Shown piece after piece: positions 31,962-55,812 of a DNA stretch of 64,000 nucleotides. A program made the position numbers and the translations under genes. Every line of letters begins with the position of its first letter. Position 1 is the stretch's first letter. Where the stretch lies: positions 171,625 to 235,624 of IMG/VR virus record IMGVR_UViG_3300027844_001828; one strand, given 5' to 3'. The notes under the pieces are model-generated. The model saw only the letters and a program-made list of their open reading frames with translations. It did no database searches and was not told the DNA's origin.

Positions 31962-32715
31962 CACTGAATGTTGCGCACATAGGCGAAGTAGCACTGAATG
32001 CGTATACGATACACACGCACACACAGGTGATACTATCAAATGATCTATAGGAGGCCTTAAAATTGATATAATGACCTGTATATAACCCATTAAGTGACAT
32101 TATGGATCATATATGACGCATTATAGAGTCCTACTGAATGTTGTGCAGGCTCCTATGACATGCACTGAATGCCCACGCAAGGGCGCACGGAACATGCACT
32201 GAATGCCTGGATAGACATGCGCTCGAACATGCGCTCGAACATACGTGTGAGAGCGCATGTTACAAAAAAGCGTAACACTTGTTATAAAATAATGTAACTA
32301 TTATATGAATGGGTAAGGACTGGGGAAAAGTGTTATACAAAAGTATAAATAATAATTAATAGAATCACTTTTTCGAATTTCAGGAGCGCTGCTCAAAAAA
32401 ATTTCTCCTTTAATGATGTTGTGTAAAGATCGCAAAATCAAACACTTACAAAAATGACTAAAATATAATAACTGTAAGGATTAAAATAGGCCGTTTAAGG
32501 GGTTGCACTGGTCGCAATAGAGGTGTATATTGTGTACCATGATGGGCAACTATCGTCGTAGTAGAGGTTAATGTTAGTAAGAAGATGACGAGTTTTTTGA
32601 CATGCACTGAATGTTCGTATGTGCGCATGTGTGTTAGTAAGTATGCACGCCTGTTAATAATGTGACCTGTCGTTTAAAAATGATGACCTGTGATTTCTAA
32701 GAGGTTAGCCAACTT
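31962..32715. other. Long non-coding locus; candidate replication origin or genome terminus
   Basis: CACTGAATG at 31962, 31992, 32163, 32197, 32605 plus TACTGAATG at 32132; AT-rich core; strand composition flips here. Confidence 0.5.
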
Positions 32716-32784
32716 GTGAACTTTAAGTTTCGCTTACGAAACTCAAAGTTCATTTATCAATATATAGGTGTGATACATTTAAAT

Positions 32785-33399
32785 ATGATTGATCCTCAGA
32801 AGAAAAAATTATATGCCTGGGAAGAATATCTACATGATCATTTGGAAATTGTAGAAGAGAGCCTATCAATCGTAGAGTGCCGAAAAATCATTCGAGAGAT
32901 GTGCGAAGACTTTGCTATCATTCCCCCAAAAGTGATAATCGGGAAAAAAGAATATGCCATGGCATCTGGGGATGGGAAATTAATCGAGTTGCCAAAATGG
33001 TTTCTGGAAGAACTATCTAGTATTCATGAGGCATGTCATGTGATCGCCTTTAGCATAGCTCCACAAGAAAATCATCATGGCCCGACATTCGTGAGATTGA
33101 TGATAGATTTTATTAAAAAGAGATGGGCATCTGAGATAACATTAAAAAGACTTGAGGATTTAGCTCTTAAACATAATCTAAAAATTGCGAAGCTTGGGGT
33201 GGTCTCTCCGGTCACGAAACGAGAGAAACAGAGGCTAAGGCGGCTAAGAACAAATGTGAAGATAGCAGACGATATGTACAGGGTGAATCAAAGGGGATCA
33301 AAGCGGGCCATTAATTATAAAAAGAAACGGGACTCTTATAAAAAAGAATTATCTGATCTCGTCGGACTTCTTTATAAAAAGTACTGGTCAGTCTTATAA
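32785..33399 (+). CDS. Zincin-motif (SprT-like) protein
   Basis: IHEACHV...HHGPTF. Confidence 0.6.
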   Translation: MIDPQKKKLYAWEEYLHDHLEIVEESLSIVECRKIIREMCEDFAIIPPKVIIGKKEYAMASGDGKLIELPKWFLEELSSIHEACHVIAFSIAPQENHHGPTFVRLMIDFIKKRWASEITLKRLEDLALKHNLKIAKLGVVSPVTKREKQRLRRLRTNVKIADDMYRVNQRGSKRAINYKKKRDSYKKELSDLVGLLYKKYWSVL

Positions 33400-33481
33400 A
33401 AGTATTGGTAATTTCTGTAAACCCTTTTGGTCATTTTCATAAAAGTCTTTACGTATATGACCAAAAGTCTGGAGAGTTGTC

Positions 33482-33515
33482 GGTTCACTGTATAAAACAT
33501 TTTATACAGTGGACC
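33482..33515 (+). repeat. 34-bp 13-8-13 palindrome, copy 1
   Basis: GGTTCACTGTATA-AAACATTT-TATACAGTGGACC; degenerate copies at 33429-33462 and 33548-33581. Confidence 0.95.
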
Positions 33516-33816
33516 GAAACGAGGAAGCGCCTGGTGTACGAAAACGGACGATTTGGTAAAAACACTTTTATACAGTGGACCGGAGGGTTGGCCGTGGAGT
33601 TTTGGTAAGATCTGTAAAATATCCCTTAATAGGTATAAGAGAAAAGAATCTTTCACAGAGTGCTTGTAATGTGAATGTTGGTGGGATATAGTGTTTGCAT
33701 GATAACCAAAACGACAATCAATGGCGACATTGTTCAGATTGAAACAGCAACATAGCAAGGGTGAAGCAGTAGAGTGGCTTGAAAAAGAGAGTGTACTAAC
33801 TTACGGATGGTGAATT

Positions 33817-34059
33817 ATGGATATCAAATATGCCAAATCTGGAAATGTTACATTGACATCTGAGGCTTTCTCTTACCATCCTTTATGGTGGCATGAGAAA
33901 GGGTTACAGGAAACTGCATCTGGGTATGGATCTAAGCTGACTACACCGTACAAGGTGCGGCACAACAATAGATGGAAGAGAGTCTATGCGATTTGCTGGA
34001 GCAATGCGGCAAGCCATTACATCTTCAACAAGGGACAACGTGAATATATTCATGGGTGA
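33817..34059 (+). CDS. Conserved phage hypothetical protein
   Basis: ETASGYGSKLTTPYKV...RVYAICWSNA motif. Confidence 0.65.
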   Translation: MDIKYAKSGNVTLTSEAFSYHPLWWHEKGLQETASGYGSKLTTPYKVRHNNRWKRVYAICWSNAASHYIFNKGQREYIHG

Positions 34060-35001
34060 AATATGAAAATCTCTGAAATACCGAATCTGGACGATCATTC
34101 AATTGATCCAAATGATTACGATAAATTGATCGTAGAGTTTCTTGTAGCAGGACAGTGCCTTCTTAGGCTCTCTAACTACGCTCAAATAAAGGCTGAAAGC
34201 ATAAAGGAAAGAAAAGCAGGGAACATTGAAAAAGCTTTTCTTCTATCTCGTAATATGGAAAATACTTATAATGAATTGCCAGATTGGGCGAGGTGGTGAG
34301 ATGAAAGCAGTAACAGGAGAATTGTGGCAAAATAAATCACCTCTGTCAAGAGTGAATGACAATCTGGTAGAACGATGAATGGGATAGGGGTTCAGCCCCC
34401 CAAGAAAAGATCACACGACACATCACAACGGAGGGTTGAGAGATGACTATCGAACACCCAGAATATTTTTACTATGCAGAGCTGGAAGGCGACTTCTTTC
34501 ATTCGTTTGATTATTATACGGATTTGGTTATCAACATCCACTGCACCTCAATTGAAATCCGTAAAACCTCGATGAAAAGGTACACTTGGCCTTGGCGGAT
34601 GCTCAGGGAGACGCATTGGGAGGCGGTGGAAGACGCCGAGAACCTCCTAAAGAATTATGCCGACGTCCTGTTCCGAAGCCAGCAGAAACCCCACCCTGCC
34701 ATCCCAGACGCAGATGCGGTGAACACCCACATCTTGAAAATGAGGGACGGGGTGTCGTTGCCGTCGCCGGAATACATGCGAGAGTGGATTGGTACTCAAA
34801 CCCTCTACCTGTATGCTGGACCTGGCCAAGTGCATGTGGAACCACTACCCCACGAACAAGGAGACGAGGAATGAGTGAATGACAAGACGATGTGCAGGTT
34901 GCGACTCTGAATCTATATAAGGGATTCTCCGAAGGTGGTCGTCATCGAATGGTTAGTTGATCATGCGACTGAGGTTCAATCCCTGTATCAGACTGCCAAT
35001 C

Positions 35002-35043
35002 TTTCTAATAACGACTTGAAAAGTCAACTTGAGGGGTTAGAGT
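35002..35043 (+). promoter_or_regulatory. Promoter-containing 42-bp direct repeat, copy 1
   Basis: TTTCTAATAACGACTTGAAAAGTCAACTTGAGGGGTTAGAGT; TTGAAA-N16-TAGAGT. Confidence 0.85.
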
Positions 35044-35108
35044 GTTATTATGTCAATAACATACAAAGAACTTGCAGCAACGATTTTGTCCTGGAATCAG
35101 GAATAACG

Positions 35109-36689
35109 ATGAAGATTAAAGTTGGTCACGAGTTCTTCCGCAAAGAGCGGTACTCCGCATACGCTGATTGGAAAACCGCATTCTGGCGGGAACTGGAACA
35201 AAATTCAGATGATGCCAAGTCAAGGCGCGTCGATATCAATATAGTTCCTGATGGGAATGGCTGTATTGTTGGATTCGATGACAACGGCTGTGGTATGAGT
35301 GAGGCTGTCATTCGGGATGTGTTTATGAGTCTTGGTGAGACTACGAAGTCGGGTGATTCTACGGGTGGGTTTGGTCGCGCTCGTATGCTGACTCACTTTT
35401 CAATGCCTAAGTATCAGATCAAATCGGGTTGTATTTATGTGAGCGGCAAGGGATCTGAGTATCAAATCAGGAAAAGTGATAGCTACGTTTTGGGGACGAA
35501 GCAGAAGATATGGATTGATGATGCTTCTATGTCAGACATGGAAATGGCTTTGCATGATTATCTTGGAAAGTGTAATCTTGCCCATGACATCTACGTCAAT
35601 GGTGTACGGTGGAACAAGTGGTTGTACAGGCGTAAGCTTATCAGGGATATGACATTTGGTTCAGTCTACGTGAACAAATCCTCAGACCTTAAAAACACAG
35701 TCGTGTTCAGGGTCAACGGGGTGATGATGTTCACTCGATATACATCGGCAAATGCGTTGGTGGTGATCGAAATCTATCCCAGTATTAGTCGTGATGTGCT
35801 TACTTCTAACCGTGATGGAATTCACTACAAGTATCAAAGCGAACTGGATATATTTCTTAACAAGTTGGCTATCGATACGACTTCGACTCTAAAGCGTAGA
35901 CGGACAAACAAGAGTACTCGCAGACAAGGACAAGGTTGTTTCATCTCCTGTGTAAAGCGGAAGGAATTGTCGGTGATGAAGCGGGATTCTGATCCATCCG
36001 ATTCCTACTCTGGTAACGGTGGCTACACTATGGATACTTCAAGTGATGAAGCCACGATAAAGTCCTTCACAGGTGTGGTTTTTGGTGGCACAAGTCAGGC
36101 AGATTCTGAGCCGATTGCAGCCTTGTACGGTGGTGATGGCTATTATGGATCTGAGTCTGAGTGTATCGCCAAACTCGTAGAATCTGATCCTACTGAGATC
36201 GATATGTATGATGTGGCGATACTTGATGAGTGTCAGGATATAGGACCGGTTAGTAAGGTGATCGAATCATACGATCCTACGAATTGGAGAGACAAGGCTG
36301 GCGGCACGAAAAAGAAGCTCCTGTCTCTGTGGCAGATTGCGGTCAAGCATTCTCTGGATATTCTTCAAGAGGAAAAACCCTCTGATGGTATTCCTTGGAT
36401 CGTTGGGTGGGTATTCGATGATAGTGAAGAGGCAGGGATGAAGGCTGCACACAAGATGTATGACGATACGCATGGGTTCCTTATCAATCCAGTAGGCTTG
36501 GATGGCAAGTTGCAATTCAAGTTGAATCCTGAGGGCAAGTCTTCATTGTTCGCAATCGCCCTACATGAGGTTACTCATGTTTATTGCGAGATGCACAATC
36601 AGGAGTTCTCGTCCCTTCATACTGCACTGACAATCAATGGGATGTCTCGGATCAAGGAAGTTCTCAGAGACATGAAGGAGAATTCATAA
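35109..36689 (+). CDS. GHKL (Hsp90/MORC-like) ATPase with C-terminal HExxH motif
   Basis: RELEQNSDDA, DDNGCGM, GGFGRA, GT; ALHEVTH...HNQEF. Start placed downstream of the promoter. Confidence 0.8.
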   Translation: MKIKVGHEFFRKERYSAYADWKTAFWRELEQNSDDAKSRRVDINIVPDGNGCIVGFDDNGCGMSEAVIRDVFMSLGETTKSGDSTGGFGRARMLTHFSMPKYQIKSGCIYVSGKGSEYQIRKSDSYVLGTKQKIWIDDASMSDMEMALHDYLGKCNLAHDIYVNGVRWNKWLYRRKLIRDMTFGSVYVNKSSDLKNTVVFRVNGVMMFTRYTSANALVVIEIYPSISRDVLTSNRDGIHYKYQSELDIFLNKLAIDTTSTLKRRRTNKSTRRQGQGCFISCVKRKELSVMKRDSDPSDSYSGNGGYTMDTSSDEATIKSFTGVVFGGTSQADSEPIAALYGGDGYYGSESECIAKLVESDPTEIDMYDVAILDECQDIGPVSKVIESYDPTNWRDKAGGTKKKLLSLWQIAVKHSLDILQEEKPSDGIPWIVGWVFDDSEEAGMKAAHKMYDDTHGFLINPVGLDGKLQFKLNPEGKSSLFAIALHEVTHVYCEMHNQEFSSLHTALTINGMSRIKEVLRDMKENS

Positions 36690-37048
36690 TGAGTTGGTAC
36701 ATAGTCGGTGAAGATGGAAAGTGTCAGGCAAAGGAGAATGATTTGCAGATCGCTTTGATGGTGGCTAAGGGAAAGGGATGTCCTTTCATTACGGATGACA
36801 TTAAGTCACCAAAGAAGCAGTGGATCAAGGTGGATGATGTGATTAGTTGCGGGGCATACATCGAAGATGCGGGAGGCGAAGTGAAAAGCGGCGGATTGGA
36901 GGTAGGTACGATGAGTAATTCAACGTTTGATCGATTAGTTCTTATTGGAGCTAAGAGAAAATGGAAAAGTGTTCCTTTGGTGATTACTTTGAGGATCATC
37001 CATAAATGCAGTGGGGGTCATCCACCTTGTGACGAGCAATGAGACTTA

Positions 37049-37090
37049 TTTCTAATAACGACTTGAAAAGTCAACTTGAGGGGTTAGAGT
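37049..37090 (+). promoter_or_regulatory. Promoter-containing 42-bp direct repeat, copy 2
   Basis: Identical to 35002-35043. Confidence 0.85.
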
Positions 37091-37764
37091 AATTGTTATG
37101 AGCGACACAGACCAAGAAGATCAGTACGAGCGTTCGATGAGTGAAGAGAAAGAAACAAAAGGATCAAGCATAACACAATTTGTTTTGATTTTTGTAGCGA
37201 TTATGTTCACCGTATGTATGAGGGTTTCACTCACAACCATAAGTGGACTTCGGGCGAAAGTTAGTGATCTTACGCAAGAAAACATTTCGCTTCGATATGA
37301 TGTTATAGAGCTTCAAGAGTTCTACGAATGCCCACCGGAGATACCATGAAATCAGTTGACAAATTAATTCGCGCTATTGATCGTGGCAAGCTTGTTGTCA
37401 CGGGCCACGATCTTATTTGTGCTGTGAACATTCACGAAGCCAGGATCGAAGTCAAGGTCTATCATGATTACGAGCATGTTCATTTCGATATCTGTTTCGA
37501 GCAACATGCTATTGACATCAACATCGAAGAGACGGATTTTGTTCTTCTCTATCAGACTTCGGCCCGGAATAATGGCCGGGTGTTAGGTCTCGAAGACTTA
37601 AATATTGTTTTGAAACTCGACTTGACAGAAGCGGCCATTGATGCTATAGTGTTTCATTACAAGTCAATCTTGTTACCCGCGACGGGTTTCACTGACGAAC
37701 AGTTAAGTGATATCGTCTCGGCATCTGAGTCACAACATTCGAATAGACAAGAGGTTACAGCCTA

Positions 37765-38553
37765 ATGCCACGGACTAATAAACCCGTCCCGAAGTTTTTA
37801 CTCACCTTGAAATCGTCAAACATCAAAACCGGGCCGATGGCTGTAAGCACTTCTCCAATGGGTACTTGCCCGGACGCCTGCCCTTTCAAGGGTAATGGTT
37901 GCTACGCTGCCTACGGCCCTGTAAAAATCTGGTGGGACGCCTGTACAGCCAATGGTGACGATCCGGTTGAGGCATACACTGAGTTCCTTAGCCGCGTTAC
38001 TGAAAACATTGACAACGATGCATTTTGGAGACATAATCAAGCTGGCGATTTATTTTCATTGAATGGTCGAACGATCAATCAAAAGGCGGCCCGTGCTTTG
38101 ATTGCTGCGAACGAGGGTAAGAAAGGTTATACTTACACTCACTACGGCGTGATCAAACAGCCTTTCACACAGAAGCGTGAGGCAGAGCGGAATCGTAAGA
38201 TTGTTGAAGAAATGAATGCGAGCGGGTTCGCTACGAATGTATCGGCTAACAGCATGGAGCATGCCGATAAGATCAAGGCGAGCGGTATCAAGGCTCCAAT
38301 CGTTACGTTGTTGCCGGAGCGGTACAAACATGACAAGAAAGCTTTCTTGACACCTGGGGGCAATAAGATCGTTGCTTGTCCCGCGATTACACATGACGAC
38401 ATTACTTGTGTGAAGTGTAAGCTTTGCATGCATCCTGAACGTGATATTATCGTGGGGTTTCCATCACATGGTAGTGGTAAACGCCGGGCTGAATCAGTGT
38501 ACACTGAATGGAGTCCGGACGAGATTAAAACAACAGCCAAGGGAAAAATCTAA
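37765..38553 (+). CDS. Cys-rich conserved phage protein (gp88/radical-SAM-like; putative Fe-S or Zn binding)
   Basis: SNIKTG, TCPDACPF...CYA, RHNQAGD, YTYTH, CPA, CVKCKLC, FPSHG. Confidence 0.6.
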   Translation: MPRTNKPVPKFLLTLKSSNIKTGPMAVSTSPMGTCPDACPFKGNGCYAAYGPVKIWWDACTANGDDPVEAYTEFLSRVTENIDNDAFWRHNQAGDLFSLNGRTINQKAARALIAANEGKKGYTYTHYGVIKQPFTQKREAERNRKIVEEMNASGFATNVSANSMEHADKIKASGIKAPIVTLLPERYKHDKKAFLTPGGNKIVACPAITHDDITCVKCKLCMHPERDIIVGFPSHGSGKRRAESVYTEWSPDEIKTTAKGKI

Positions 38554-38925
38554 TGGGAAAGGAACAGAAAGTTATTTTAGAGGGTTCGTATTTAACTATC
38601 TCACACTTGGCTTAGATCATGTCCTTATGAGATGAAACCTGGCGAGACCGATTGTTTCGCTCCTTCTGAGCTTCAAGAGTTTTATGATATCGTATCTAAA
38701 ACTGGGTTTTTTATTTTTCGCGGTTTGGATTTACTTATTTTTTGGTTTTTCAATAATTGTTGTAATCTCTCTTGTGTTATTTACTCTCATTAATGTTTTC
38801 TTTTTAATAGCCTTATTTAATAAGGCGGAATATTTTGATGATTGACTTGACAGGAATGCCCTCAGCGGTTACAGTATGGTTAACTGTAACTGTTAACATA
38901 ACCAACCAGGAGTTGTAAAGCCAAA

Positions 38926-40688: not shown

Positions 40689-41460
40689 GGTGAAAGACCC
40701 CAGGAACATCAGCGAATTTACAAGTAATCGAAAACCCCCTCCTGAACCATCAAGCAAATCTGAAAAAGAATTGTATTGGGCTCAACAGATTGCCGAGATG
40801 TTCTCAGAGAAAGAACAGAAGGACAAGGCGGGTGAAGTCGTAGGTTACTGTATTGAAGAGGGTTACGACTTGCTCGATATATTTCGAGCGTTAGTGGTTC
40901 TTAACTCGGCCTATGAACGTGAGAAGTTAAAAGTATTAAACCTCCAAGAAAAAACTTAGAATGGAGTTGTAAAGATCTTCATTTAACGGTATAGTAATTG
41001 GTGTTAAGGGGCATATTGCCCAGAGGTGAAAAAGCGAACAAGGAGAAGGCTTATGAATATAACTGTGAGACAATTTGCTCAGATCAACAACATGTATCCA
41101 CCTAATTTGGCGGACATGGATTACAAGACCCGTAAGAAGGTAGAGGCCAAGGTGTATGCGAGAGCCTCGGCGGTTGTTAACTATCTCCTTACGATCAATG
41201 CAATCACTGATACTGGCAAGAAAGTGCAGGCACGTGGTGGTATTGGGCGAAGTTCGGTCGTGTACAGCGTACCAGCCGGTGCGATTCATTTGACCTTGGT
41301 TGCAGAAGGCACCGATGTTCCTGAGGATACCCCTTATCCTGAGAAGCCTAAGGCAGAAGAGACCACACCAGAGGTAGATACAAACATGACTACCACTGAG
41401 AATGAAGAATCAACGGAGCCTGTGGAAGCGTCAGCGTAGATCCTGAGAAGTTGTAAGATG

Positions 41461-41496
41461 GTGCTCGTCGGGGAACCCGGCGGGCACTTTCTTTTT
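41461..41496 (+). terminator. Intrinsic terminator
   Basis: GTGCTCGTCGGG-GAA-CCCGGCGGGCAC followed by a T-tract. Confidence 0.8.
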
Positions 41497-42450
41497 ATTA
41501 GGGCTTGCATCCACTGAATGTGGGGGTATCGTATGTGTATGAACACCCACACACCCCCGGAGACATATTAAGATGGACCCTCAAAGCTACAATACCTTTC
41601 GCACCATGTTCCAACGTGGTGAGATCACTGGTGAGATCACCCAGTTCGGTGCGGATGAGGTGAAGGGTGATACCAACTTTGGTCATGCACAAACACTTAC
41701 GCCAGAACAGTATCTGGGTCTTGTTACCGACCCTCTCCAAGAAGTAGCTGCACTTTTGAGTTCTCGCTTCGGTCTTGGTCTTGTTGACATCGACGAAGAG
41801 ATGGCGATTCGTAATTTAGTGGAAGGCTCTACGCCAGAAGCTATTGTGAATGATATAGAGACTAAACAAGACCTTGATCGTAATGATCAAGGCCCCTACG
41901 GATTGGGGTTACAGGGTTGGATTTGAACAGGTCTTAAACACTTCTGTGTCGTATAATATACATATATCTACAGGAGATGACATGTTAAAGATACTACAAA
42001 CAGAATTAGATAGAACATCAATAATTAAACAACTATCATCGGAGTAGATTGTGACTCATATGGAATTAGTAGGATGGTATGCAATAGGCTTTTTTGTAGT
42101 ATATGTATTGTTTTATGTATTAGAAATCATAGAAATTTCATGAGAAGAAGATGATGAGTTTCCAGGAGGCGCAAGCATGTCACTTAAAGCATTGCTTGTT
42201 CTTCGTTAGAAAGATAGGTTCTGATGAGTCTGAGCCGTTAGAAACGGCAAAGCTTTTGAAAGACAAGACTCACGTATTTTTTCAGGCTTAGCTTATTCTA
42301 AGCGCATTGAAGCCGGTCACATATTAGTCCCTGCCCATCCTCCGTCCTCATCAACGAGGCGACCGCCAAGTATACACCCGCGAAGAGTTCGATGCTGAAT
42401 ATGAGTGGGTGGGCTGCTCCTACCCGCCACAATCGAGCGGGTCCTAACTT

Positions 42451-42484
42451 GGTTCACTGTATAAAAACTTTTATACAGTGGACC
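42451..42484 (+). repeat. 34-bp palindrome, copy 2
   Basis: GGTTCACTGTATA-AAAACTTT-TATACAGTGGACC. Confidence 0.95.
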
Positions 42485-43683: not shown

Positions 43684-43860
43684 ATGAAATACATTCGCAG
43701 AAATCCGCTGGAAAAAGACTTTGGTTGGGGAAAATTAAAATTAAGAAGTTGGGATAAAATTAAAAATGAGCTTGACAAATGCGATCTTCTTTGTGGAAAT
43801 TGCCATGATGAAGCGCATCAAGAAATTAGAACTGGAACTATTTTTACCCCAATAGCTTAA
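43684..43860 (+). pseudogene. HNH endonuclease C-terminal remnant running into tRNA-Arg
   Basis: NPLEKDF...WDKIKNELDKCDLLCGNCHDEAH. Confidence 0.7.
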
Positions 43861-43920
43861 GGGATAAAGCAGTGGATTTCTAATCCACATATTCAGGTTC
43901 GAATCCTGGTTGGGGTACCA
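43846..43920 (+). tRNA. tRNA-Arg(UCU)
   Basis: Acceptor ACCCCAA/TTGGGGT, anticodon arm GTGGA-TTTCTAA-TCCAC, T-loop GGTTCGAATCC, encoded CCA. Confidence 0.92.
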
Positions 43921-46452: not shown

Positions 46453-46586
46453 GGGACCGTAGCACAATGGTATGTCATAATTGTCATGGAGAGATACATG
46501 ATGAGCTAATTCCTAAAAAACAAATTTTAGAACTTCAAATTAGTAAATGGAATCGTGGCCAAACGGTTAAGGCTGCATGCTCATAA
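46453..46586 (+). pseudogene. tRNA 5' fragment fused to HNH C-terminal remnant
   Basis: GGGACCGTAGCACAATGGT joined to (M)VCHNCHGEIH. Confidence 0.6.
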
Positions 46587-46624
46587 CATGTTGATTGTAG
46601 GTTCGAACCCTACCGGTTCCACCA
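46549..46624 (+). tRNA. tRNA with CAU anticodon (elongator Met or Ile2)
   Basis: Acceptor GGAATCG/CGGTTCC, anticodon arm GCATG-CTCATAA-CATGT, GGTTCGAACCC, encoded CCA. Confidence 0.9.
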
Positions 46625-48130: not shown

Positions 48131-48580
48131 TTGAGATGTAACGCAGGAATTAGTCCAGAGCACATGGCAGATCAGCATTTGTGTGAAGCAAGTGAACTTA
48201 AAATGGTGCCTGGCACCATAAAAAAGAGATTAAAATTTAACATAACAAAACCCATCCCAGATAAGTTTTGTTTGAATGGAGGACATATCTCGTTCTTCTA
48301 TGATAAATTGCACTATTTGCGCCTTCGCCATGGTCATGTATTTAAGGAATGCATAGCCAGAGGTAGAAAATGCCAGAGCTTATTTTATGATCTATCAGAT
48401 TTTCCTGACAATCTGATAAATGATTGGCATCCTACTTTAGATGATAGTAGGATAGTAAGAACCCGCATGGTGAAGAGATTATTTCAGAAACCCAAATTTT
48501 ATCGCTATAAAGGAGAACCTATAGATGATATGGAAGACTTTTGCTCTAGGATCATGCTGAGTCCTTTATATACGAAGTAA
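48131..48580 (+). CDS. denV: Pyrimidine-dimer DNA glycosylase (T4 endonuclease V-like)
   Basis: ADQHL..E, IPDKFCL.GGH..FFYDKL.YL, EC..RG, KPKFYRY; may lack one residue near the catalytic Glu. Confidence 0.78.
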   Translation: MRCNAGISPEHMADQHLCEASELKMVPGTIKKRLKFNITKPIPDKFCLNGGHISFFYDKLHYLRLRHGHVFKECIARGRKCQSLFYDLSDFPDNLINDWHPTLDDSRIVRTRMVKRLFQKPKFYRYKGEPIDDMEDFCSRIMLSPLYTK

Positions 48581-49297: not shown

Positions 49298-49597
49298 ATG
49301 AATTTTGAACAGAGAATCGCACATAAGCTTGTCGGTATAGCTGAAAGGTTAATAGTTGTCGGTGAGATTAGAAAGCCTGCCGATGTAGATCAGAAGTTCT
49401 GGGAAGCATTAGTCGAAGCAGCAGACGATGTTGTGGATGGTAAGGGTAATTTTAAGAACCATGTCAAGAAATTAAAGAAGCAATTCCCTACTTCAGATGA
49501 GGAAGACATTACTTCCATAATGCAAGAAATGATTGGCCACTCTGAAAGGCTTGCAGCTGATCGGGGAACTTTGGTTCATAGGTGCTCGTGTCTATGA
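49298..49597 (+). CDS. IAxEL-leader family protein; 3' part apparently disrupted
   Basis: MNFEQRIAHKLVGIAERL; internal ERLAA. Confidence 0.6.
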   Translation: MNFEQRIAHKLVGIAERLIVVGEIRKPADVDQKFWEALVEAADDVVDGKGNFKNHVKKLKKQFPTSDEEDITSIMQEMIGHSERLAADRGTLVHRCSCL

Positions 49598-50087
49598 GAA
49601 CCCTGCTGTTTTTGAAGAGGGGCGACAAGTCTGAGTTTGAGACTAATGGCACGAAATATCGTGGCACAGTTAGTCGTGTTTATAAGGATGAGGCTGATCT
49701 TGAAAAGATTAATCCCCCTACCTCAGATGATGATGATGAGGCTACAGTTCTTCTCACTCGTTTGAAAAAGGTGTAATGTAGTGAGATATAATGCGATATC
49801 TAATGCGATATCTAATCTAATAGATGCCGCAGAGAGACTTGCAGCTACAGATATCGTTTTAGATGCCCTTGAGGTTGCAGAGCGTATTACTAAGGATTTC
49901 ACTCGAAAGGGTGAGATTTCCAAGAATGATGTCAAAAACATGGGTGTATCAAAATGTGTCTGTTAGCGCCTTTGGCGATGGTTTCAACTCGAAAGAGAAG
50001 GCCTCAGAGAAGGGCTACTTTGCAATCGCCATTGAACAAGAACCGTCACAAGTTGTGGCAAAGGAGAATGGTTAAGTCTCAAGTAGA

Positions 50088-50229
50088 GGCTTAGCAAGGC
50101 AGTACTGGTGTAGCCGGTTAGGGTTTTGAGCCCGGTGGCAGTCGCACCCTTAAGATACAAAAGTATTGATAAGGCACCAGTTGGGAATAAGCTGCACAGT
50201 CGAAGCGGACGTAGAGATTGCCAAGTCTC
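50088..50229 (+). ncRNA. Candidate structured RNA upstream of HNH gene
   Basis: GGCTTA/TAAGCT and ACTGGTGT/GCACCAGT stems enclosing two hairpins. Confidence 0.35.
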
Positions 50230-50255
50230 GCCCCACCGTTTCATTTTGGATAACT

Positions 50256-50672
50256 ATGAAAGAAACCATCATAAAGAAAAAGCAAGACCTCGAAAGAACG
50301 GGTGGTCACATCAAACCTGAAGATGTATTCCCATTCATTGAGCCAAGCACGAAACCGAACAGGAGTCCAAAGCATGATTTCCTGGGACACTCAGTAAATG
50401 TTTCGTCTCCCCGCTACAATGTCTTCGCAAACAAGGGATGTGACTGTGTTACTTGCGGAGTTAAGGGTAAGTATTTCCTCCTTGAAAGGCACAAGGCCTC
50501 CGGCCCCAAGCAGCCCTATCATTTGAATCTCTACGCTATCGATTTCGAAGGGGATGAGGTACTTATGACTGTTGACCACATCATCCCAGCTTCGCATGGT
50601 GGACCCAGATCCTTCGACAACCTTCAGCCCATGTGCAAAGTTTGTAATGAAGAAAAGGGTAACACAGTTTGA
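50256..50672 (+). CDS. HNH endonuclease
   Basis: CVTCG...MTVDHIIPASHGG...NLQPMCKVCNEEKGN. Confidence 0.88.
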   Translation: MKETIIKKKQDLERTGGHIKPEDVFPFIEPSTKPNRSPKHDFLGHSVNVSSPRYNVFANKGCDCVTCGVKGKYFLLERHKASGPKQPYHLNLYAIDFEGDEVLMTVDHIIPASHGGPRSFDNLQPMCKVCNEEKGNTV

Positions 50673-50697
50673 CAAACACTGAATCATGCAGTAGGTT

Positions 50698-50878
50698 ATG
50701 TGTGCATGGTGAGTAACGCTCGCCCGTAAGGCGCACGTAGCCGCTATATAGGTGATCCTCAGATGATCAAGAGGGGATAGGGAGTTCGTCGTCCCGAACA
50801 ATCAAGATGGCGATAGGGTAACTTAGAGGTTGGGGGGTGACGTTGAAGTCACGGCTCTTTGATGGAGTCATCACAACC
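50698..50878 (+). ncRNA. Candidate structured RNA or leader downstream of promoter
   Basis: Serial hairpins and a three-way junction GGTTG[GTGAC/GTCAC][GGCTC/GAGTC]CAACC. Confidence 0.4.
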
Positions 50879-51281
50879 ATTTAACTTTATTAAGGAAAAT
50901 CATGAGCAACACCGACACAATCGAAGCAGTTGAAGAAGTTATCGAGAGAACCGATTTCATTCCTTCGCGGGATCTTGTGCCTCCCCCGTTTGACCCGAAG
51001 GCTTTCTTCGTTGATGTCGCAGAGAGTGATAGATACACCTTCACGATTAATGGTGAGCACTTTGATCATAACTCTCCTAACTTGGAAGACACCAAGAGGC
51101 AGGCGAGCATCTTCGCACAGAATCTCGAAAAAGGCTTCCATCGAGTTGTGATCTTCAAGAAAGAGGGTCTTTTCTTAGAGTTCGATGTTCATCAAGAGAA
51201 TGGTGACTTCGCCCCACGAAATCATCATGACCATACCAACAGGTACGCTCATCTCGATACTGATTGGTGGAAGACCAAGCC

Positions 51282-51572
51282 GTGAAACGTCATCGTATAA
51301 TCAACTGGCTTGAGAACAATGGCCATGATGTTATTGATAACCCTACAATACTCTTATTAGATGGACTTGACGAGGCATTCATGGGTGTGACAGAGTTGTG
51401 GAGAGAGAGTACTATCGTAACCGTAGCTAATTACGACTACAAGAAGTGTGTCAACACTCTCATGAAACGAGATGGGATGCCTTACGAAGAGGCTATGGAA
51501 TTCATTGAATCTCAATCCATTGGCGCATACGTCGGAATCTACACTCCAGTTTTTAGTCATAACGTGGCTTGA
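51282..51572 (+). CDS. Conserved phage hypothetical protein
   Basis: DGLDEAFMG...YDYKKC...DGM.YEEAMEF...GAYVG..TPVF. Confidence 0.65.
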   Translation: MKRHRIINWLENNGHDVIDNPTILLLDGLDEAFMGVTELWRESTIVTVANYDYKKCVNTLMKRDGMPYEEAMEFIESQSIGAYVGIYTPVFSHNVA

Positions 51573-52557
51573 CCTTTTCAGATGGCGTGATATGTTGTTT
51601 GCACTTTGATAAGCACTGAATGTTTTCACACACACCACGGGACGCACTGAATGAATACGCAAGACTTGGCGGAAGACATGCAATACGCGGGGTTGATACC
51701 ATCTCAGGGGATCATTACGACAGCTGTCAAAGAATTTTTTGCCAAATACCTTGCCAAAGAGGTCTCGATTTCCTTTTCTCTCGACGAGGTCAAGGGATTC
51801 GCAGAGGATAACCTTGGTATTGCCATTACTGACGAGGACGCTGTGAAGATTTTGGCGAAGATCCGGCAGCGACTATCGGCCTCAACGAAAGCGTGGTCAT
51901 TCAAGCTATTACAGATTACTATGCCTAAGAAAAGGACAAGTATATGCAAAGACTGCAAAGACGTTGGTATGTTCTTGAAGGATGGGGCAATTGAGAGTTG
52001 TCGTAAATGCAGCAAGCTTAACGCTCCGCAGTCCCTTGAGAATTCATTCGAGATATTCCGCCAAGTGATGTTAGCATATGAGGGGTTTTACGACGATTTG
52101 TACGACGACCCTGATTTCGATGAGAAGTGCCTTAAACTTTTTGAAGCCATGATAAAGCAAAAGCGGGAGATGAAAGATGGACAGCAGTGAGACCGAAGAA
52201 GAAGCTATGAAAAAGGGAGACGAACTCCTTGCTATGATGAAAGGTGATGGCTGGGAGCTTAGTGTTCACGAAAACATGGGGTGGCACTACAGTGTTCGAA
52301 ATGGCCCCATGCAGATGCAGTCAAGCTCTTCCGGTGGAACCACCACATATTCGATACTTCTTGGCGGGAGCTTGGTGGTCCGCACCGCCGGTGTGTCACA
52401 CTTTCTTGTTGAAGACTGGTACGCCGACCCGAACGAAGCTGTTGAAGCACAAATCTATAAGGCAAAAGAGTTCGTTCTCTCACAGGTCGAGTTGTTGACC
52501 CACATCATAAAGTGTTGTGTTTAACCAACAAACGTAACACATCCAGAAGATTTATCA

Positions 52558-52591
52558 AGAGCCTCGACGAAATATTATCGTCGGGGCTTTT
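52558..52591 (+). terminator. Intrinsic terminator preceding palindrome pair
   Basis: AGAGCCTCGACGA-loop-TCGTCGGGGCTTTT. Confidence 0.7.
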
Positions 52592-52643
52592 GCGTGTACG
52601 GCCCATTGAGGTGATCGCCGAGGGACTCCCTTCCACCTCGCTT

Positions 52644-52677
52644 GGTTCACTTTATAAAATGTTTTATACAGTGGACC
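52644..52677 (+). repeat. 34-bp palindrome, copy 3 (inverted spacer)
   Basis: GGTTCACTTTATA-AAATGTTT-TATACAGTGGACC. Confidence 0.95.
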
Positions 52678-52746
52678 GAAACGGTTTGCCGTCGCTGGCG
52701 GTCGGGGCCCCCGATATCGCCAGCTCTTCAGGCTCATGTTGCTCCT

Positions 52747-52780
52747 GGCTCACTGTATAAAACATTTTATACAGTGGACC
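52747..52780 (+). repeat. 34-bp palindrome, copy 4
   Basis: GGCTCACTGTATA-AAACATTT-TATACAGTGGACC. Confidence 0.95.
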
Positions 52781-52855
52781 GAAACGGATAGGAGCCGGGC
52801 TCCCTGGTGAGACAAAATGACACACATTATTTTCGAAAATAGTCTTTTATCAAGC

Positions 52856-52883
52856 TTGACATAAACGTTTGGTGAGTTAGAGT
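52856..52883 (+). promoter_or_regulatory. Sigma70-like promoter, 16-bp spacer
   Basis: TTGACA-N16-TAGAGT. Confidence 0.75.
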
Positions 52884-52927
52884 CATTGCATGCATCGAAA
52901 AATCATCATCCAACTCGGAGTTTAATC

Positions 52928-53557
52928 ATGGACCTTGTACCCGGAACACTTGCAGTTCATCGTGGCAGTATTGTTTTCGTCACCAGAGTCGAAAACGCGA
53001 AAAAGTATCCCATCATCTTCAAGAAAGCGTTACAGGCGAAGGGGACATATCACGACAGAGCCACCGGCTTTTCTTCTGTGATCGGCTCATTTGACTTGAA
53101 GCAGTTCAACGAACTCTCCGGGTCTCCGGCGCGAACCATTGAAGCTGACGATGACGTTGATCTCGATGCGGTGGAAGTTTACATTAAGGGGTTGAACATC
53201 GATGATGATCTCCTCTTGAAGAGTGGTAAGACAGCGAAGTATCGCGGATGGGTATCGCGTCGTCCAGTGATGCCAATCTCAGCCACTATCAATGGTAGGC
53301 CGTTTAAGCTCCGGCCCGACAGCATTGTCCTCCCGAAAGATAAACGTTCTGAGGATGTAATCATGGAAGAAGTCCTTGATGTCTACTGCGGTCTCTCGCC
53401 GGAAAATCTTACCAGTGACGGTGAAGTGAGAGCCTCGGCGGTTGTTAACCAGCGTTATCGTGAGTTGAAAAAGCAGCTTCGCGGCTTGTGCAGTGAACTT
53501 GGCCGTGATGTCAGCGAGACAGAAGCGTACTCTTATCCCGGAAACATGAACAAGTAA
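52928..53557 (+). CDS. Hypothetical protein with LSPENLxxDGE domain
   Basis: GGAG SD; C-terminal motif common in large phages. Confidence 0.65.
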   Translation: MDLVPGTLAVHRGSIVFVTRVENAKKYPIIFKKALQAKGTYHDRATGFSSVIGSFDLKQFNELSGSPARTIEADDDVDLDAVEVYIKGLNIDDDLLLKSGKTAKYRGWVSRRPVMPISATINGRPFKLRPDSIVLPKDKRSEDVIMEEVLDVYCGLSPENLTSDGEVRASAVVNQRYRELKKQLRGLCSELGRDVSETEAYSYPGNMNK

Positions 53558-53567
53558 CTGGAGAATT

Positions 53568-54260
53568 ATGATGTCTGTGATCCAACTCAATACCGAGCAT
53601 GAAAACCGAAGTGAGACATGGGACGGGGGGAGTGATCTTCCTGACGGCCTGTCTGTCAAAGAGATTCCTACCACCTATCAGTATGATGGTAAGACCGTAT
53701 CTTACTCATACAAGCGGTATACCTATCCCGAACTCGGCTCACCCCGGATGTATGACAGCATGATGGGCGGCGTCATCGTCCCCATTAGCGGGAAGAAGTA
53801 TCGCATCATCATTGAAGTCAATTACTATGATGATGTTCCAAGTAACGCTATCCTCACGTTCATTCCGACCGACGAGTCAGAGACGGAATTCACTCCCTAT
53901 GATGTAGTTGCGCATCACAAGATGCTCGTCGAAGAGATGAAGAAACGTCGAGACAATTATCTTGAGGAAGATGATGAAGATTATAACCTCTTCTACAAGA
54001 ACATGGCAGCAGAGGAACAGCACAACATTGATCAGATTGAAATGGGCGATTATTCCTATTCTTCCGGGAGCAAGGTCAAGTTGTTTGGTCAACCGGACTT
54101 CGTTCAAGATGGAATGTTTCCACTTTATGAAGGACGCATCGCTCGCCACCTTGTCACCTTTGAAGATAACTGGGGTGACTCTGGGAATACCAACATCATG
54201 ATTGGTCTTGATGAAGCCGGAATCCCAGCAAAAGCATGGTTCGAGGCAAGTTGTTGCTAA
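53568..54260 (+). CDS. YwqG/DUF1963-like protein
   Basis: KLFGQPDFVQ...WGDSG...terminal CC. Confidence 0.5.
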   Translation: MMSVIQLNTEHENRSETWDGGSDLPDGLSVKEIPTTYQYDGKTVSYSYKRYTYPELGSPRMYDSMMGGVIVPISGKKYRIIIEVNYYDDVPSNAILTFIPTDESETEFTPYDVVAHHKMLVEEMKKRRDNYLEEDDEDYNLFYKNMAAEEQHNIDQIEMGDYSYSSGSKVKLFGQPDFVQDGMFPLYEGRIARHLVTFEDNWGDSGNTNIMIGLDEAGIPAKAWFEASCC

Positions 54261-54276
54261 TCTTTTCAAAAGTGGC

Positions 54277-54304
54277 TTGAAATTTTCACAACCTACGTTA
54301 TAGT
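54277..54304 (+). promoter_or_regulatory. Sigma70-like promoter, 16-bp spacer
   Basis: TTGAAA-N16-TATAGT. Confidence 0.7.
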
Positions 54305-54362
54305 ATTATCAACGTCAGCAAAAGTTGACAGTAACTGAAACCGCCACCAATGGGAGGCACTT

Positions 54363-55427
54363 ATGAGCGCAGGAATCATACCCGGAGTCGATGCAGGATG
54401 TATTGGCTACAAGGAACATTTCGGGGGTACCTGGCATGGGTTCCCGGAGTACGAAGTTATCGATGGCCCAGTCTCAATGGAACAGACCCGTAAAATTCTT
54501 GAGCATGAAGTTGTCATGAATCCGGTAACGTTGACTGGTGACTTCGAAGGCGAGGAAACCGAGATGTTCGCTCTTGTTCGCAAGGACACTGGCCGCGTCC
54601 TTTACAAAGAGAGCGTGTCGGATGAGTATTACATCACCCAGAACAAGGCGTTTCTCGACCAGCTTCAGTTGCGTATCTTGACCCCAAACCCGCAAGTTTC
54701 AATCGAATCCACCGGTACGCTCTTCGCCTTCCGCGTCGGTTTCGTGAACTTGCTTCTCAATCGGTTCCGTGTCAATGGTGATGACAGTGAGACAATCGCT
54801 CGTCTCATGTACTACAATGCGTTCGGTGGTCGCAGCATTACAGCTGGCGCACACACCACTCGTATCGAATGTGCCAACACGATGAACATGGCCGAAGCGC
54901 AAGCTTACGCTAACGCAACGATCAAGAAGTTCAAGCATACAAAGAATGCTGAGAAACGTCTTGCTGACCACCTCGTTGACTTGGGCGAGATGTATTCGCT
55001 CATGGAAACGCACAAGGACGCACTCAACTGGCTTTCTTCGCAGACTATCAACTCAACGGAAGTTCAGCGGTTCGTTGGTAACCTCTTCGCCCTCCCAGCC
55101 AAGGCTTCGAAGACGATGATCAGTCGGCGAACCAGAGAGCGGGGCGAACTCTTGCAACACTTCGAGGACTGTGACAATCTTCAGGGTGCGATTGCGAGGA
55201 CTCGATTTTCCATGCTTCAGGCTGTTATCTGGTACGCGAACAACAACAATATCCGTGGGGATAGTGACATGGCGTATTCGTACTTCAATACGGTTTCCGG
55301 CGGGACACGTGATGCCTTGAATCAGCAGGCGTTCAGGCTCTTGACTTGTCAAGACATCCCGCTCCCAGTCGTTGACATCACTGAACCGGAAACGGCGGGT
55401 GAGACGGAACTTGCTCCCGCAGAGTAA
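54363..55427 (+). CDS. DUF932 (TIGR03299-like) protein
   Basis: WHG, VSDEY..TQN, ESTGTL, RIECANT, KHT. Confidence 0.75.
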   Translation: MSAGIIPGVDAGCIGYKEHFGGTWHGFPEYEVIDGPVSMEQTRKILEHEVVMNPVTLTGDFEGEETEMFALVRKDTGRVLYKESVSDEYYITQNKAFLDQLQLRILTPNPQVSIESTGTLFAFRVGFVNLLLNRFRVNGDDSETIARLMYYNAFGGRSITAGAHTTRIECANTMNMAEAQAYANATIKKFKHTKNAEKRLADHLVDLGEMYSLMETHKDALNWLSSQTINSTEVQRFVGNLFALPAKASKTMISRRTRERGELLQHFEDCDNLQGAIARTRFSMLQAVIWYANNNNIRGDSDMAYSYFNTVSGGTRDALNQQAFRLLTCQDIPLPVVDITEPETAGETELAPAE

Positions 55428-55812
55428 CGTCCACTGAATGCGCACACGGGGGAGGGGTTTCCTCCCCCATTAACATCTGAGGTAAAATTATGAGTCGTAA
55501 TTAGATTCATGTATCAAGTACAGACAGTTTTTTTGGCAGAGCGAGATCGACAGGTATCTTTTTGGTGGTTACACAGTTGTCCCACAAACAACTACGATTG
55601 TTATTTCTGGTGAAAAGAAGTTCTTCAGTATGTTCATGAATCCACCGAAGGAACGCGAGGGTGATTCGATCACTGATGAAGATTAAAAGAAATTTCACAA
55701 TACGGTTTGTATTTAATTCGATGCGTGTCATATTGTGATTGTTAAGGCCGAATGTGGGGTTTGCCACCACAAAATAAACACCAAACATGTTCAAGCAATG
55801 GAGAACACCAGC

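What the first reader, a model, noticed from the sequence alone, without database searches (positions are those of the whole stretch)
31962..55440. Strand-biased nonamer CACTGAATG, often in pairs about 31 bp apart
Seen: exact + strand copies at 31962, 31992, 32163, 32197, 32605, 38502, 41512, 51614, 51645 and 55432, where fewer than one is expected by chance in 64 kb. Neighbour spacings are 30, 31, 34 and 31 bp (counting the 32132 variant), about three helical turns. One copy lies inside a promoter spacer (41512). The only reverse copy noticed (23974) is left of the 32-kb locus. It shares CACTG with the 34-bp palindrome arm. Inference: iteron, or a Chi/KOPS-like polar signal, possibly bound by the same protein.
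Basis: partly seen in the sequence, partly recalled or inferred. Interest (0 to 1): 0.6.

Follow-up and report, generated by a model that had tools for sequence, protein, structure and literature searches.

The report
Strand-specific box in phage gene cassettes
A nine-base word repeated on one strand, almost always between genes, in the accessory region of an uncultured marine giant phage is real and far beyond chance; it is most likely a docking site for a regulator of those genes, not a genome-wide polarity signal, and its binding partner is unknown.

Summary
CACTGAATG occurs 10 times on the + strand at the stated coordinates and once on the - strand at 23974, against 0.8 expected. The window is the last 64 kb of a 235.6-kb marine jumbo-phage contig. 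All forward copies in the whole genome lie in one 23-kb stretch, and the other 203 kb have none, so a Chi/KOPS-like genome-wide polar signal is refuted.

The stretch is a GC-richer accessory ("hyperplastic") region of small genes. The assembly stops inside it. Overlapping metagenome contigs extend it by 39.5 kb and raise the count to 20 forward and 0 reverse (8-mer CACTGAAT: 27 and 0). Of 28 sites, 23 lie outside scored genes. Flanks are unrelated. Five pairs sit 30-34 bp apart with different spacers.

The box co-occurs with a 34-bp palindrome that sits between terminators and sigma-70-type promoters, an arrangement like the PeSL cassettes of T4-type phages. In four diverged cassettes the box lies 36-38 bp upstream of the -35 element.

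Best reading (about 0.45): an asymmetric protein-binding box that regulates these cassettes. Rivals are a promoter for a phage sigma-like factor, origin iterons, a cassette boundary or nick site, and an mRNA signal. The binding protein was not identified.

The parts
31962..31970 (+). Nonamer copy 1. It starts directly after the stop codon of ORF 31737-31961 and is the first of a pair 30 bp apart.
31992..32000 (+). Nonamer copy 2, followed by an alternating purine-pyrimidine tract.
32132..32140 (+). One-mismatch copy TACTGAATG. Its flanks are homologous to those of copy 1 (repeat family D4).
32163..32171 (+). Nonamer copy 3, in the extended form TGACATGCACTGAATG.
32197..32205 (+). Nonamer copy 4, 34 bp after copy 3.
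32215..32261 (+). Two 12-nt direct repeats (ACATGCGCTCGA) that resemble the extended box, merging into a 16-bp-arm hairpin. The repeat copy number differs between assemblies.
32251..32500 (.). AT-rich stretch (26-30% GC) inside the 750-bp non-coding control region. No DnaA boxes.
32605..32613 (+). Nonamer copy 5 (TTGACAtgCACTGAATG). It heads a unit of about 0.9 kb (gene 32716-33399) that ends at the palindrome at 33486.
33486..33511 (.). Palindrome core (CACTGTATAAAA-NN-TTTTATACAGTG; 34 bp with its GGTT/GGACC flanks). A right-arm half copy lies at 33569-33584.
38502..38510 (+). Nonamer copy 6, inside the last 50 nt of the DUF7227 gene (37765-38553).
41460..41498 (+). Terminator-like hairpin with a T run, immediately upstream of copy 7.
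41512..41520 (+). Nonamer copy 7, between a weak -35-like TTGCAT and a -10-like TATCGT. It lies 52 nt before the RBS and ATG of gene 41573-41926 and heads a 0.94-kb unit that ends at the palindrome at 42455.
42455..42480 (.). Palindrome core, followed by a sigma-70-like promoter (TTGTAA-16-TATTGT, read by eye).
50677..50685 (+). Last-base variant CACTGAATC, 4 nt after the stop of the HNH gene. It lies in the spacer of TTGACA-17-TAGGTT.
51614..51622 (+). Nonamer copy 8, the first of a pair 31 bp apart, about 18 nt after a promoter-like TTGACC-16-TATGTT (51569-51596).
51645..51653 (+). Nonamer copy 9. Its ATG is the first possible start of ORF 51651-52190. It heads a 1.1-kb unit that ends at the palindromes at 52648 and 52751.
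52648..52673 (.). Imperfect palindrome copy with one arm mismatch.
52751..52776 (.). Palindrome core, followed by the promoter-like TTGACA-16-TAGAGT at 52856-52883.
55432..55440 (+). Nonamer copy 10, 4 nt after the stop of the DUF932 gene (54363-55427). It heads a 0.87-kb unit (gene about 55735-56178) that ends at a terminator and the palindrome at 56302.
56302..56327 (.). Palindrome core between a terminator-like hairpin (about 56211-56246) and the promoter-like TTGCAA-16-TATATT (56391-56418).
62477..62502 (.). Palindrome core, the last one before the contig end. The cassette array continues in overlapping metagenome contigs.

Best explanation
CACTGAATG is the invariant core of an asymmetric DNA box about 13-16 bp long, T(A/G)ACAT(C/G)CACTGAATG(ccc). 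Part of it forms a 13-bp imperfect dyad, CATsCAcTGaATG. The box belongs to the intergenic control regions of the accessory ('hyperplastic') gene-cassette region of an uncultured marine jumbo phage. That region is built from repeated modules of terminator, 34-bp palindrome, T-rich tract and sigma-70-type promoter, like the PeSL elements of T4-type phages. I infer that the box is a docking site for a sequence-specific regulator, probably phage-encoded. This regulator would bind cooperatively to pairs on the same face of the helix, 30-34 bp apart, and raise or lower transcription of the cassettes. The six-copy cluster at 31962-32613 would be the main control region, at the border between the core genome and the accessory region. 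Shown here: enrichment, confinement to one region, strict orientation, intergenic placement, unrelated flanks, phased pairs, fixed spacing to the -35 element in diverged cassettes, and co-occurrence with the palindrome. Inferred only: that a protein binds the box, which protein it is, and the sign of the effect.
For: The box has 20 forward and 0 reverse copies in the 71.6-kb region, against 0.58 expected. The 203.5-kb core has 0 forward copies. The 8-mer CACTGAAT has 27 forward and 0 reverse copies. Of 28 sites, 23 lie fully outside scored genes (p 3e-4; p 3e-6 with a generous ORF mask). Information content falls to background outside positions -7 to +16, so the box is not riding on a longer repeat. 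There are five pairs at 30, 31, 34, 31 and 30 bp whose spacers are unrelated in sequence. Four cassettes with diverged intervening sequence keep the box 36-38 nt upstream of the -35 hexamer, with conserved islands at the box, the T tract, the -35 and the -10. Some sites lie in spacers after terminator-like hairpins and before the next gene or promoter: 41512, and the pair at extension coordinates 95229 and 95259. The box co-occurs with the palindrome, in the same orientation; in the extension it often lies within about 30-75 nt of one. Core-genome promoters are classical sigma-70 promoters, so host RNA polymerase with added regulators is the expected mode of transcription. There is no conserved RNA hairpin downstream of the box.
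Against: No binding protein was identified. Pfam and PHROGs are blank for nearly all neighbouring ORFs. The only DNA-binding candidate is weak and lies outside the window: P0003, with an excisionase-like HTH (PHROG 66, E 5e-4). Strict 27:0 orientation is more than a simple repressor site needs. Several sites sit in very short gaps between genes (extension coordinates 64442 and 64814) or in coding sequence (38502, and extension coordinate 79379), where an operator role is not obvious. The position relative to promoters and start codons varies in the window's own copies. There are no relatives beyond one phage population at 99.5% identity or more, so true phylogenetic footprinting is limited to paralogous cassettes.
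Confidence: 0.45

Rival explanations
1. The box is the core of a promoter for RNA polymerase redirected by a phage sigma-like factor that has only region 2, in the manner of T4 gp55. It would define a second temporal class of cassettes, analogous to the PmSL cassettes of vibriophage nt-1.
For: Every copy is co-directional with the genes and almost all are intergenic. Box-headed units of about 0.9-1.1 kb with unrelated genes recur and end at a terminator and palindrome. One unit (41512) is separated from the upstream operon by a terminator-like hairpin and has no good sigma-70 promoter of its own. The genome has a Sigma70_r2 hit at genome coordinate 56887 and no region 4 hit. The box is a single conserved block with no -35 partner.
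Against: Five to six copies lie within 250 bp with no ORF for the next 500 nt. Pairs 30-34 bp apart would occlude each other as promoters. The distance to the next start codon ranges from 6 to more than 700 nt. Many copies lie upstream of a palindrome and a normal sigma-70 promoter. The box is absent from the 203-kb core, where most middle and late genes lie. No -10-like TAnnnT occurs at a fixed distance; only 2 of 28 sites have one 6 nt downstream.
Confidence: 0.2
2. The box and the palindrome mark the two ends of mobile gene cassettes of about 1 kb. The box would be a strand-specific nick or crossover site for a phage nuclease or recombinase, for example the HNH protein at 50166-50672.
For: The distance from a box to the next palindrome is bimodal: 45-75 nt or 870-1140 nt. 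Four of the five exact palindromes in the window have a box 870-1110 nt upstream, while gene content differs between units. Related contigs carry tandem 'empty' palindrome arrays. Contigs in DNA runs carry many alternative flanks at the palindrome. A box variant lies 4 nt after the HNH gene. The 27:0 strand bias fits a nicking site. This is an inference; the analogy with strand-specific nicks in T5, phiKMV and tf phages is from memory.
Against: No tyrosine recombinase was detected. The alternative junctions seen in reads are at the palindrome, not at the box, and may only reflect repeat length against assembly k-mer size. Phased pairs and the fixed distance to the -35 are not explained.
Confidence: 0.12
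3. The box acts in the mRNA, as a cleavage site for an endoribonuclease or as a binding site for a translational regulator, in the manner of T4 RegB or RegA.
For: The box has strict sense-strand orientation. It sits in very short gaps between co-oriented genes, 4 nt after real stop codons at 55432, 50677, and extension coordinates 64442 and 64814. RNA-library contigs cover 31827-32123, which includes two copies (low depth, and DNA carry-over is not excluded).
Against: There is no conserved structure around the box. Phased pairs with diverged spacers point to DNA geometry. Several copies lie after terminators and before promoters. The ATG inside the box is a plausible start codon at only one or two sites.
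Confidence: 0.1
4. The cluster at 31962-32613 is a replication origin whose iterons are the nonamer.
For: There are six phased direct repeats, degenerate 12-nt copies, a hairpin, and an adjacent 250-bp stretch of 26-30% GC.
Against: There are no DnaA boxes and no recognisable initiator, helicase loader or ParB near the cluster. Of 28 sites, 22 are dispersed over 70 kb in promoter-proximal or intergenic positions. GC skew shows no turn at this point.
Confidence: 0.08
5. The box is a genome-wide polar signal of the Chi or KOPS kind.
For: Only the strand bias inside the window.
Against: The core has 0 forward copies in 203.5 kb. The box is confined to one region and is intergenic rather than spread through coding sequence.
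Confidence: 0.01

Closest known systems
PeSL and PmSL cassettes of T4-type phages (Arbiol et al. 2010, PMC2839356; Comeau et al. 2014, PMC4122927)
   Same: Both have repeated composite modules: a stem-loop just upstream of an AT-rich tract, a sigma-70-like promoter and an SD. Both flank small ORFan genes, are concentrated in hyperplastic regions, and are associated with gene gain and loss. nt-1 also has a second cassette class marked by a short asymmetric box, the Mot box.
   Different: Here the stem-loop is an almost invariant 26-34-bp AT-rich palindrome, not a short GC stem. The phage is not evidently T4-like: it has a DnaE-type polymerase and giant ORFs with no family hits. The nonamer is not a described PeSL component, and it does not behave like a Mot box because it has no -10 element at a fixed distance.
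Dispersed asymmetric operators of the phage P1 C1 repressor (from memory, not tested)
   Same: Both are an asymmetric site present in many copies scattered over a region, some in pairs and some overlapping promoters.
   Different: There is no sequence similarity and no repressor gene is known here. The P1 sites serve lysogeny, while this phage shows no integrase.
Upstream activator or repressor sites near -82, such as phi29 p4 and class I activators (from memory)
   Same: In four cassettes the box lies at about -82 to -74 relative to the inferred transcription start, upstream of a T-rich UP-like tract.
   Different: Other copies lie at quite different positions: in spacers, in leaders, or upstream of the palindrome.
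Plasmid and phage origin iterons
   Same: Both are direct repeats in helical phase next to an AT-rich stretch.
   Different: The core is 9 bp rather than 17-22 bp. There is no adjacent initiator gene and no DnaA boxes, and most copies lie far from the cluster.
Chi and KOPS polar octamers
   Same: Both are short, oriented words.
   Different: The box is not genome-wide, is not in coding sequence, and shows no relation to replication direction.

Membership tests
Chi/KOPS-like polar signal | Over-represented throughout the genome | tested here: not met
   0 forward and 2 reverse copies in the 203.5-kb core against about 0.7 expected per strand. All forward copies lie in one region.
Chi/KOPS-like polar signal | Polarity follows replication direction and switches at the origin or terminus | tested here: not met
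   No copies lie outside the accessory region, so no polarity profile exists. GC skew is uniformly positive.
Origin iterons | Tandem direct repeats in helical phase | tested here: inconclusive
   Spacings of 30, 31 and 34 bp occur in the cluster, but the core is only 9-16 bp and there are gaps of 140 and 408 bp.
Origin iterons | Adjacent AT-rich unwinding region | tested here: met
   Window 32251-32500 has 26-30% GC.
Origin iterons | Adjacent initiator gene and/or DnaA boxes | tested here: not met
   No DnaA box with one mismatch or fewer in 31700-32800. The flanking ORFs give no family hits or only a weak SprT-like hit.
Origin iterons | Repeats confined to the origin | tested here: not met
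   22 of 28 sites are dispersed over 70 kb.
PeSL-type regulatory cassettes | Stem-loop immediately upstream of an AT-rich tract and a sigma-70-like promoter | tested here: met
   This holds for the palindrome modules. The nonamer is an extra element within or beside them.
PeSL-type regulatory cassettes | Many copies flanking small variable genes in a hyperplastic region | tested here: met
   27 exact palindromes lie between 33.5 and 102.5 kb of the tiling path, 0.1-10 kb apart; genes are mostly without family hits.
PeSL-type regulatory cassettes | Associated with indels between close relatives | tested here: inconclusive
   There are many alternative flanks at the palindrome in DNA-run contigs, and empty tandem arrays in other contigs. 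Both could partly be assembly effects.
PeSL-type regulatory cassettes | Host phage is T4-type | not tested
   No T4 core genes were looked for. The DnaE-type polymerase and the absence of a MotCF hit suggest otherwise (the control for one search was uninformative).
T4 MotA-box middle promoter | -10 element TAnnnT at a fixed distance downstream of the box | tested here: not met
   No information content downstream. Only 41512 and 50677 have TAnnnT 6 nt after the box.
nut-like boxA/boxB RNA signal | Conserved hairpin a few nucleotides downstream | tested here: not met
   Mean folding z of -0.45 for 28 sites against -0.36 for controls.
Sequence-specific operator or activator site | A cognate DNA-binding protein | not testable with these tools
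   No HTH_3 or ParB hit in the genome. There is one weak excisionase-like HTH candidate in the extension.

The most novel reading that the evidence does not exclude
The nonamer and the 34-bp palindrome are the 5' and 3' boundaries of a phage-borne system of mobile gene cassettes of about 1 kb. The system would be integron-like in logic but have unrelated sites and no integrase. The strand-specific box would be nicked or recombined by a phage enzyme, and this would build an accessory array of more than 70 kb in a marine jumbo phage.
Probability: 0.1. Interest if true: 0.75.

Novelty: new variant of a known kind. Interest (0 to 1): 0.42.

Why it matters
Large phages keep most of their unknown, fast-changing genes in hyperplastic regions, and how those regions are regulated and reshuffled is known only for T4-type phages. 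This uncultured marine jumbo phage, apparently not T4-like, has an array of more than 70 kb. The array is built from an almost invariant palindrome-promoter module plus a second, strictly oriented box. If the box is a regulator site, it gives a handle on a whole regulon of about a hundred ORFan genes, because a pull-down could identify the regulator. If it is a cassette boundary, it would point to a new route of gene exchange in ocean viruses.

Tried and rejected
- **Close relatives.** Megablast and blastn against the phage and plasmid collections found none.
- **Related loci in IMG/VR.** The 227-aa, 584-aa and 403-aa proteins returned only the same phage or nothing.
- **Nonamer pairs in IMG/VR.** The scan gave 45 hits. 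Nearly all are coding repeats in unrelated viruses and one is the same phage. One unrelated P22-like contig (L051) has tandem ACACTGAATGT repeats upstream of its terminase genes, but it shares no proteins with this genome, so I treat it as coincidence.
- **Palindrome in prokaryote genomes.** It is absent from 185,579 species genomes.
- **Rfam.** Only two tRNAs were found.
- **Downstream RNA hairpins.** Not enriched.
- **Stop/start coupling through the TGA and ATG in the box.** Not general.
- **Phage RNA polymerase.** No T7-like RNA polymerase hit (the control was uninformative). No DFDGD-type motif in the giant ORFs.
- **Other factors.** No sigma region 4, HTH_3, tyrosine recombinase, MotCF or ParB hits.
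- **Other strand-biased words.** GGCAGAGTG and TTGTCGGTG are coding repeats. GGTATAATA and GCTATAGTA are ordinary sigma-70 -10 regions.
- **Atlas look-up of the 179-aa protein behind the 51614/51645 pair.** Nothing usable.
- **Metatranscriptome run.** Only low-depth contigs were available, and they cannot show transcript starts.

Full report
**Observation.** That is 11 matches against 0.83 expected from dinucleotide shuffles, and no shuffle reached 11. One-mismatch forms are not enriched overall (24 against 19 expected). The spacings of 30, 31, 34 and 31 bp are correct.

**What the window is.** The window is the last 64 kb (171625-235624) of a 235,624-bp linear IMG/VR virus record, rated 93% complete.
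- The genome has 41% GC and almost every gene is on the + strand.
- It encodes a DnaE-type polymerase, RecD2, ribonucleotide reductase, an NAD-dependent ligase and a ClpB-like ATPase. It also has several giant ORFs (up to 2,759 aa) with no family hits.
- It occurs in marine and seawater metagenomes of 17 studies.
- No close relative exists in the phage or plasmid collections.

**Genome-wide distribution.** The whole genome holds 10 forward copies, all between window 31962 and 55440, and two reverse copies.
- The first copy starts directly after the last gene of an A-rich block. It opens a 750-bp non-coding region.
- There the GC content steps up from 0.38-0.42 to 0.43-0.48 for the rest of the contig.
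- The word therefore belongs to one compositionally distinct region. It is not a genome-wide signal, which disposes of the Chi/KOPS reading.

**The companion palindrome.** The same region, and only it, carries a 34-bp palindrome with the core CACTGTATAAAA-NN-TTTTATACAGTG.
- Exact cores lie at 33486, 42455, 52751, 56302 and 62477. An imperfect copy lies at 52648 and a half copy at 33569.
- Alignment of its surroundings shows a recurring module: a terminator-like hairpin, about 60 nt, the palindrome, about 45-65 nt, a T-rich tract, then a sigma-70-like promoter of the form TTG(T/C/A)AA-16/17-TAnnnT.
- This is the architecture described as PeSL (promoter-early stem-loop) in T4-type phages (PMC2839356, PMC4122927).
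- Core-genome promoters are classical TTGACA/TTGCAA-17-TATAAT sites, so host RNA polymerase with sigma-70 is evidently used.

**The region extends beyond the window.** A scan of metagenome contigs for the palindrome returned 40 loci.
- Several are the same genome.
- Others overlap the window's end and one another at 99.5-100% identity. They give a tiling path that runs 39.5 kb past the contig end.
- The published contig therefore stops inside the repeat-rich array.
- Over the resulting 71.6-kb region there are 27 exact palindromes and 20 forward nonamers, with none in reverse (0.58 expected; Poisson 4e-24). The 8-mer CACTGAAT occurs 27 times forward and never in reverse.
- The last base tolerates change: G 20 times, A 3, C 2, T 2.

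**Anatomy of the box.**
- Counting the variant at 32132, 23 of 28 sites lie fully outside scored genes.
- Information content is at background beyond positions -7 to +16. The extended consensus is T(A/G)ACAT(C/G)CACTGAATG followed by a C-rich stretch. The stop-like triplet at -7 to -5 is present in 10 of 28 sites (p 3e-7).
- The central 13 bp form an imperfect dyad, CATsCAcTGaATG, of which only the right part is invariant.
- Flanks are otherwise unrelated, so the box is not a passenger of a longer repeat.
- No distal partner at a fixed distance exists. No conserved downstream hairpin exists either.
- The internal TGA and ATG do not generally act as stop and start codons.

**Placement.** There are five pairs at 30-34 bp (31962/31992, 32132/32163, 32163/32197, 51614/51645, and 95229/95259 in the extension). 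Their spacers differ in sequence, which points to a constraint on helical phase rather than to recent duplication.

In the extension the box often lies within about 30-75 nt of a palindrome, on either side but always in the same orientation. In four cassettes whose intervening sequence has diverged, the box stays 36, 37, 37 and 38 nt upstream of the -35 hexamer. The conserved islands in these cassettes are exactly the box, the T tract, the -35 and the -10.

In the window itself, the box mostly heads units of about 0.9-1.1 kb with unrelated genes, each ending at a terminator and palindrome. The distances are 881 nt (32605 to 33486), 943 nt (41512 to 42455), 1106 nt (51645 to 52751) and 870 nt (55432 to 56302). 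The copy at 41512 follows a strong terminator-like hairpin by 14 nt and precedes an RBS and ATG by 52 nt.

**Interpretation.** The combination of features is what a sequence-specific DNA-binding site looks like:
- an invariant short core and unrelated flanks;
- phased pairs;
- a fixed upstream position in diverged promoter modules;
- positions in spacers between terminators and promoters;
- association with a dyad element that shares CACTG(T/A)AT.

I therefore read the box as a cis-regulatory protein-binding site of the accessory-region cassettes, with the six-copy cluster at the region's border as a main control region. This is an inference, because no binder was found. Almost all neighbouring ORFs are blank in Pfam and PHROGs. 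The genome shows no HTH_3, ParB, sigma region 4 or tyrosine recombinase hits. The only DNA-binding candidate is a 403-aa protein in the extension with a weak excisionase-like HTH (PHROG 66, E 5e-4). Its own gene contains a box.

**Rivals.**
- *Promoter for a phage sigma-like factor.* A Sigma70_r2 hit lies at genome coordinate 56887. This rival explains the strict orientation and the box-headed units. It fits poorly with tandem copies 30 bp apart, with five to six copies in front of 500 nt of non-coding DNA, with widely varying distances to start codons, and with absence from the core genome.
- *Cassette boundary, nick or crossover site.* The bimodal distance from box to palindrome suggests this. 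So do the empty palindrome arrays in other contigs and the many alternative flanks at the palindrome. No junctions were seen at the box itself.
- *mRNA signal.* This fits the sense-strand bias and the sites in very short gaps between genes. It does not fit the phasing or the lack of structure.
- *Origin iterons.* This fits the cluster and the AT-rich stretch. There are no DnaA boxes, no initiator and no skew change.

**Novelty.** Repeated promoter and stem-loop cassettes in hyperplastic regions are known from T4-type phages. This case differs in four ways. The phage is a different, uncharacterised marine jumbo phage. The stem-loop is a long, nearly invariant palindrome. The array exceeds 70 kb. 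A second, strictly oriented box accompanies the palindrome. I rate it a new variant of a known kind, of moderate interest. It would rank higher if the box proves to be a cassette boundary or nick site.

Noticed in passing
window 9228-10670 (+): A 480-aa protein with WGR, PARP regulatory and PARP catalytic domains (E 1.6e-28). This is a eukaryote-type poly(ADP-ribose) polymerase architecture in a marine jumbo phage.
   Followed up: no
window 64000 and beyond; loci L108, L110, L079, L086, L097, L077: The 235.6-kb contig ends inside the repeat-rich cassette array. Overlapping metagenome contigs at 99.5-100% identity extend it by at least 39.5 kb, so the genome is probably 275 kb or more rather than the size implied by the 93% completeness estimate.
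   Followed up: partly
L093 (reverse strand) 846-1230 and 4882-4978; also L106, L109, L084: Tandem 'empty' arrays of the same palindrome, 3+3 copies 50-130 nt apart, in contigs of 54% GC that share nothing else with this genome. They are either another part of the array or another phage using the same element.
   Followed up: partly
window 31971-32030, 32614-32645, 51623-51640, 55438-55448; extension 64822-64840, 95240-95275: Many boxes are followed within 0-12 nt by alternating purine-pyrimidine tracts (CGCACAC, CACACGCA, GTATGTGCGCATGTGTGT; up to 18-25 nt). The word TGCGCACA, or its complement, lies next to three boxes. The role is unknown: it could be a second site or Z-DNA-prone DNA.
   Followed up: partly
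window 32063-32079, 32654-32670, 32675-32691: A third repeat, (A)ATG(A/T)GACCTGT, occurs three times in the 750-bp control region. One copy overlaps an extended -10-like TGATATAAT.
   Followed up: no
window 32215-32238: The 12-nt unit ACATGCGCTCGA is present twice here but once in the 85.8-kb contig Ga0209402_10000145. This is copy-number variation within the population.
   Followed up: no
L051 5440-5700 (IMGVR_UViG_3300036715_001952): An unrelated P22-like contig has ACACTGAATGT in tandem (periods of 15 and 23 nt) next to GAACATGCATG repeats, upstream of its small and large terminase and portal genes. The same two words (CACTGAATG and AACATGC) co-occur in the window. No shared proteins were found.
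   Followed up: partly
window 1878-3851, 19258-20427, 48131-48580, 59490-60578; L110 3541-4596 (-): Auxiliary genes: an FtsH-like AAA plus M41 peptidase, SprT-like with DUF2786 and DUF7168, a DenV-like pyrimidine-dimer glycosylase, alanine dehydrogenase, and an NAD-dependent sugar epimerase/dehydratase.
   Followed up: no
window 43846-43920 and 46549-46624: tRNA-Arg(TCT) and tRNA-Met(CAT) lie inside the accessory region.
   Followed up: no
L110 5678-6889 (-), protein P0003: A 403-aa protein with a weak excisionase or transcriptional-regulator-like HTH (residues 70-149; PHROG 66, E 5e-4). It carries a nonamer in its own coding sequence just after the HTH. It is the only DNA-binding candidate seen in the array.
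   Followed up: partly
window 33478-33521: In DNA-run contigs, depth over the palindrome is about ten times that of its flanks, and at least ten different sequences adjoin it. This shows how many contexts the element has in the sampled communities.
   Followed up: no
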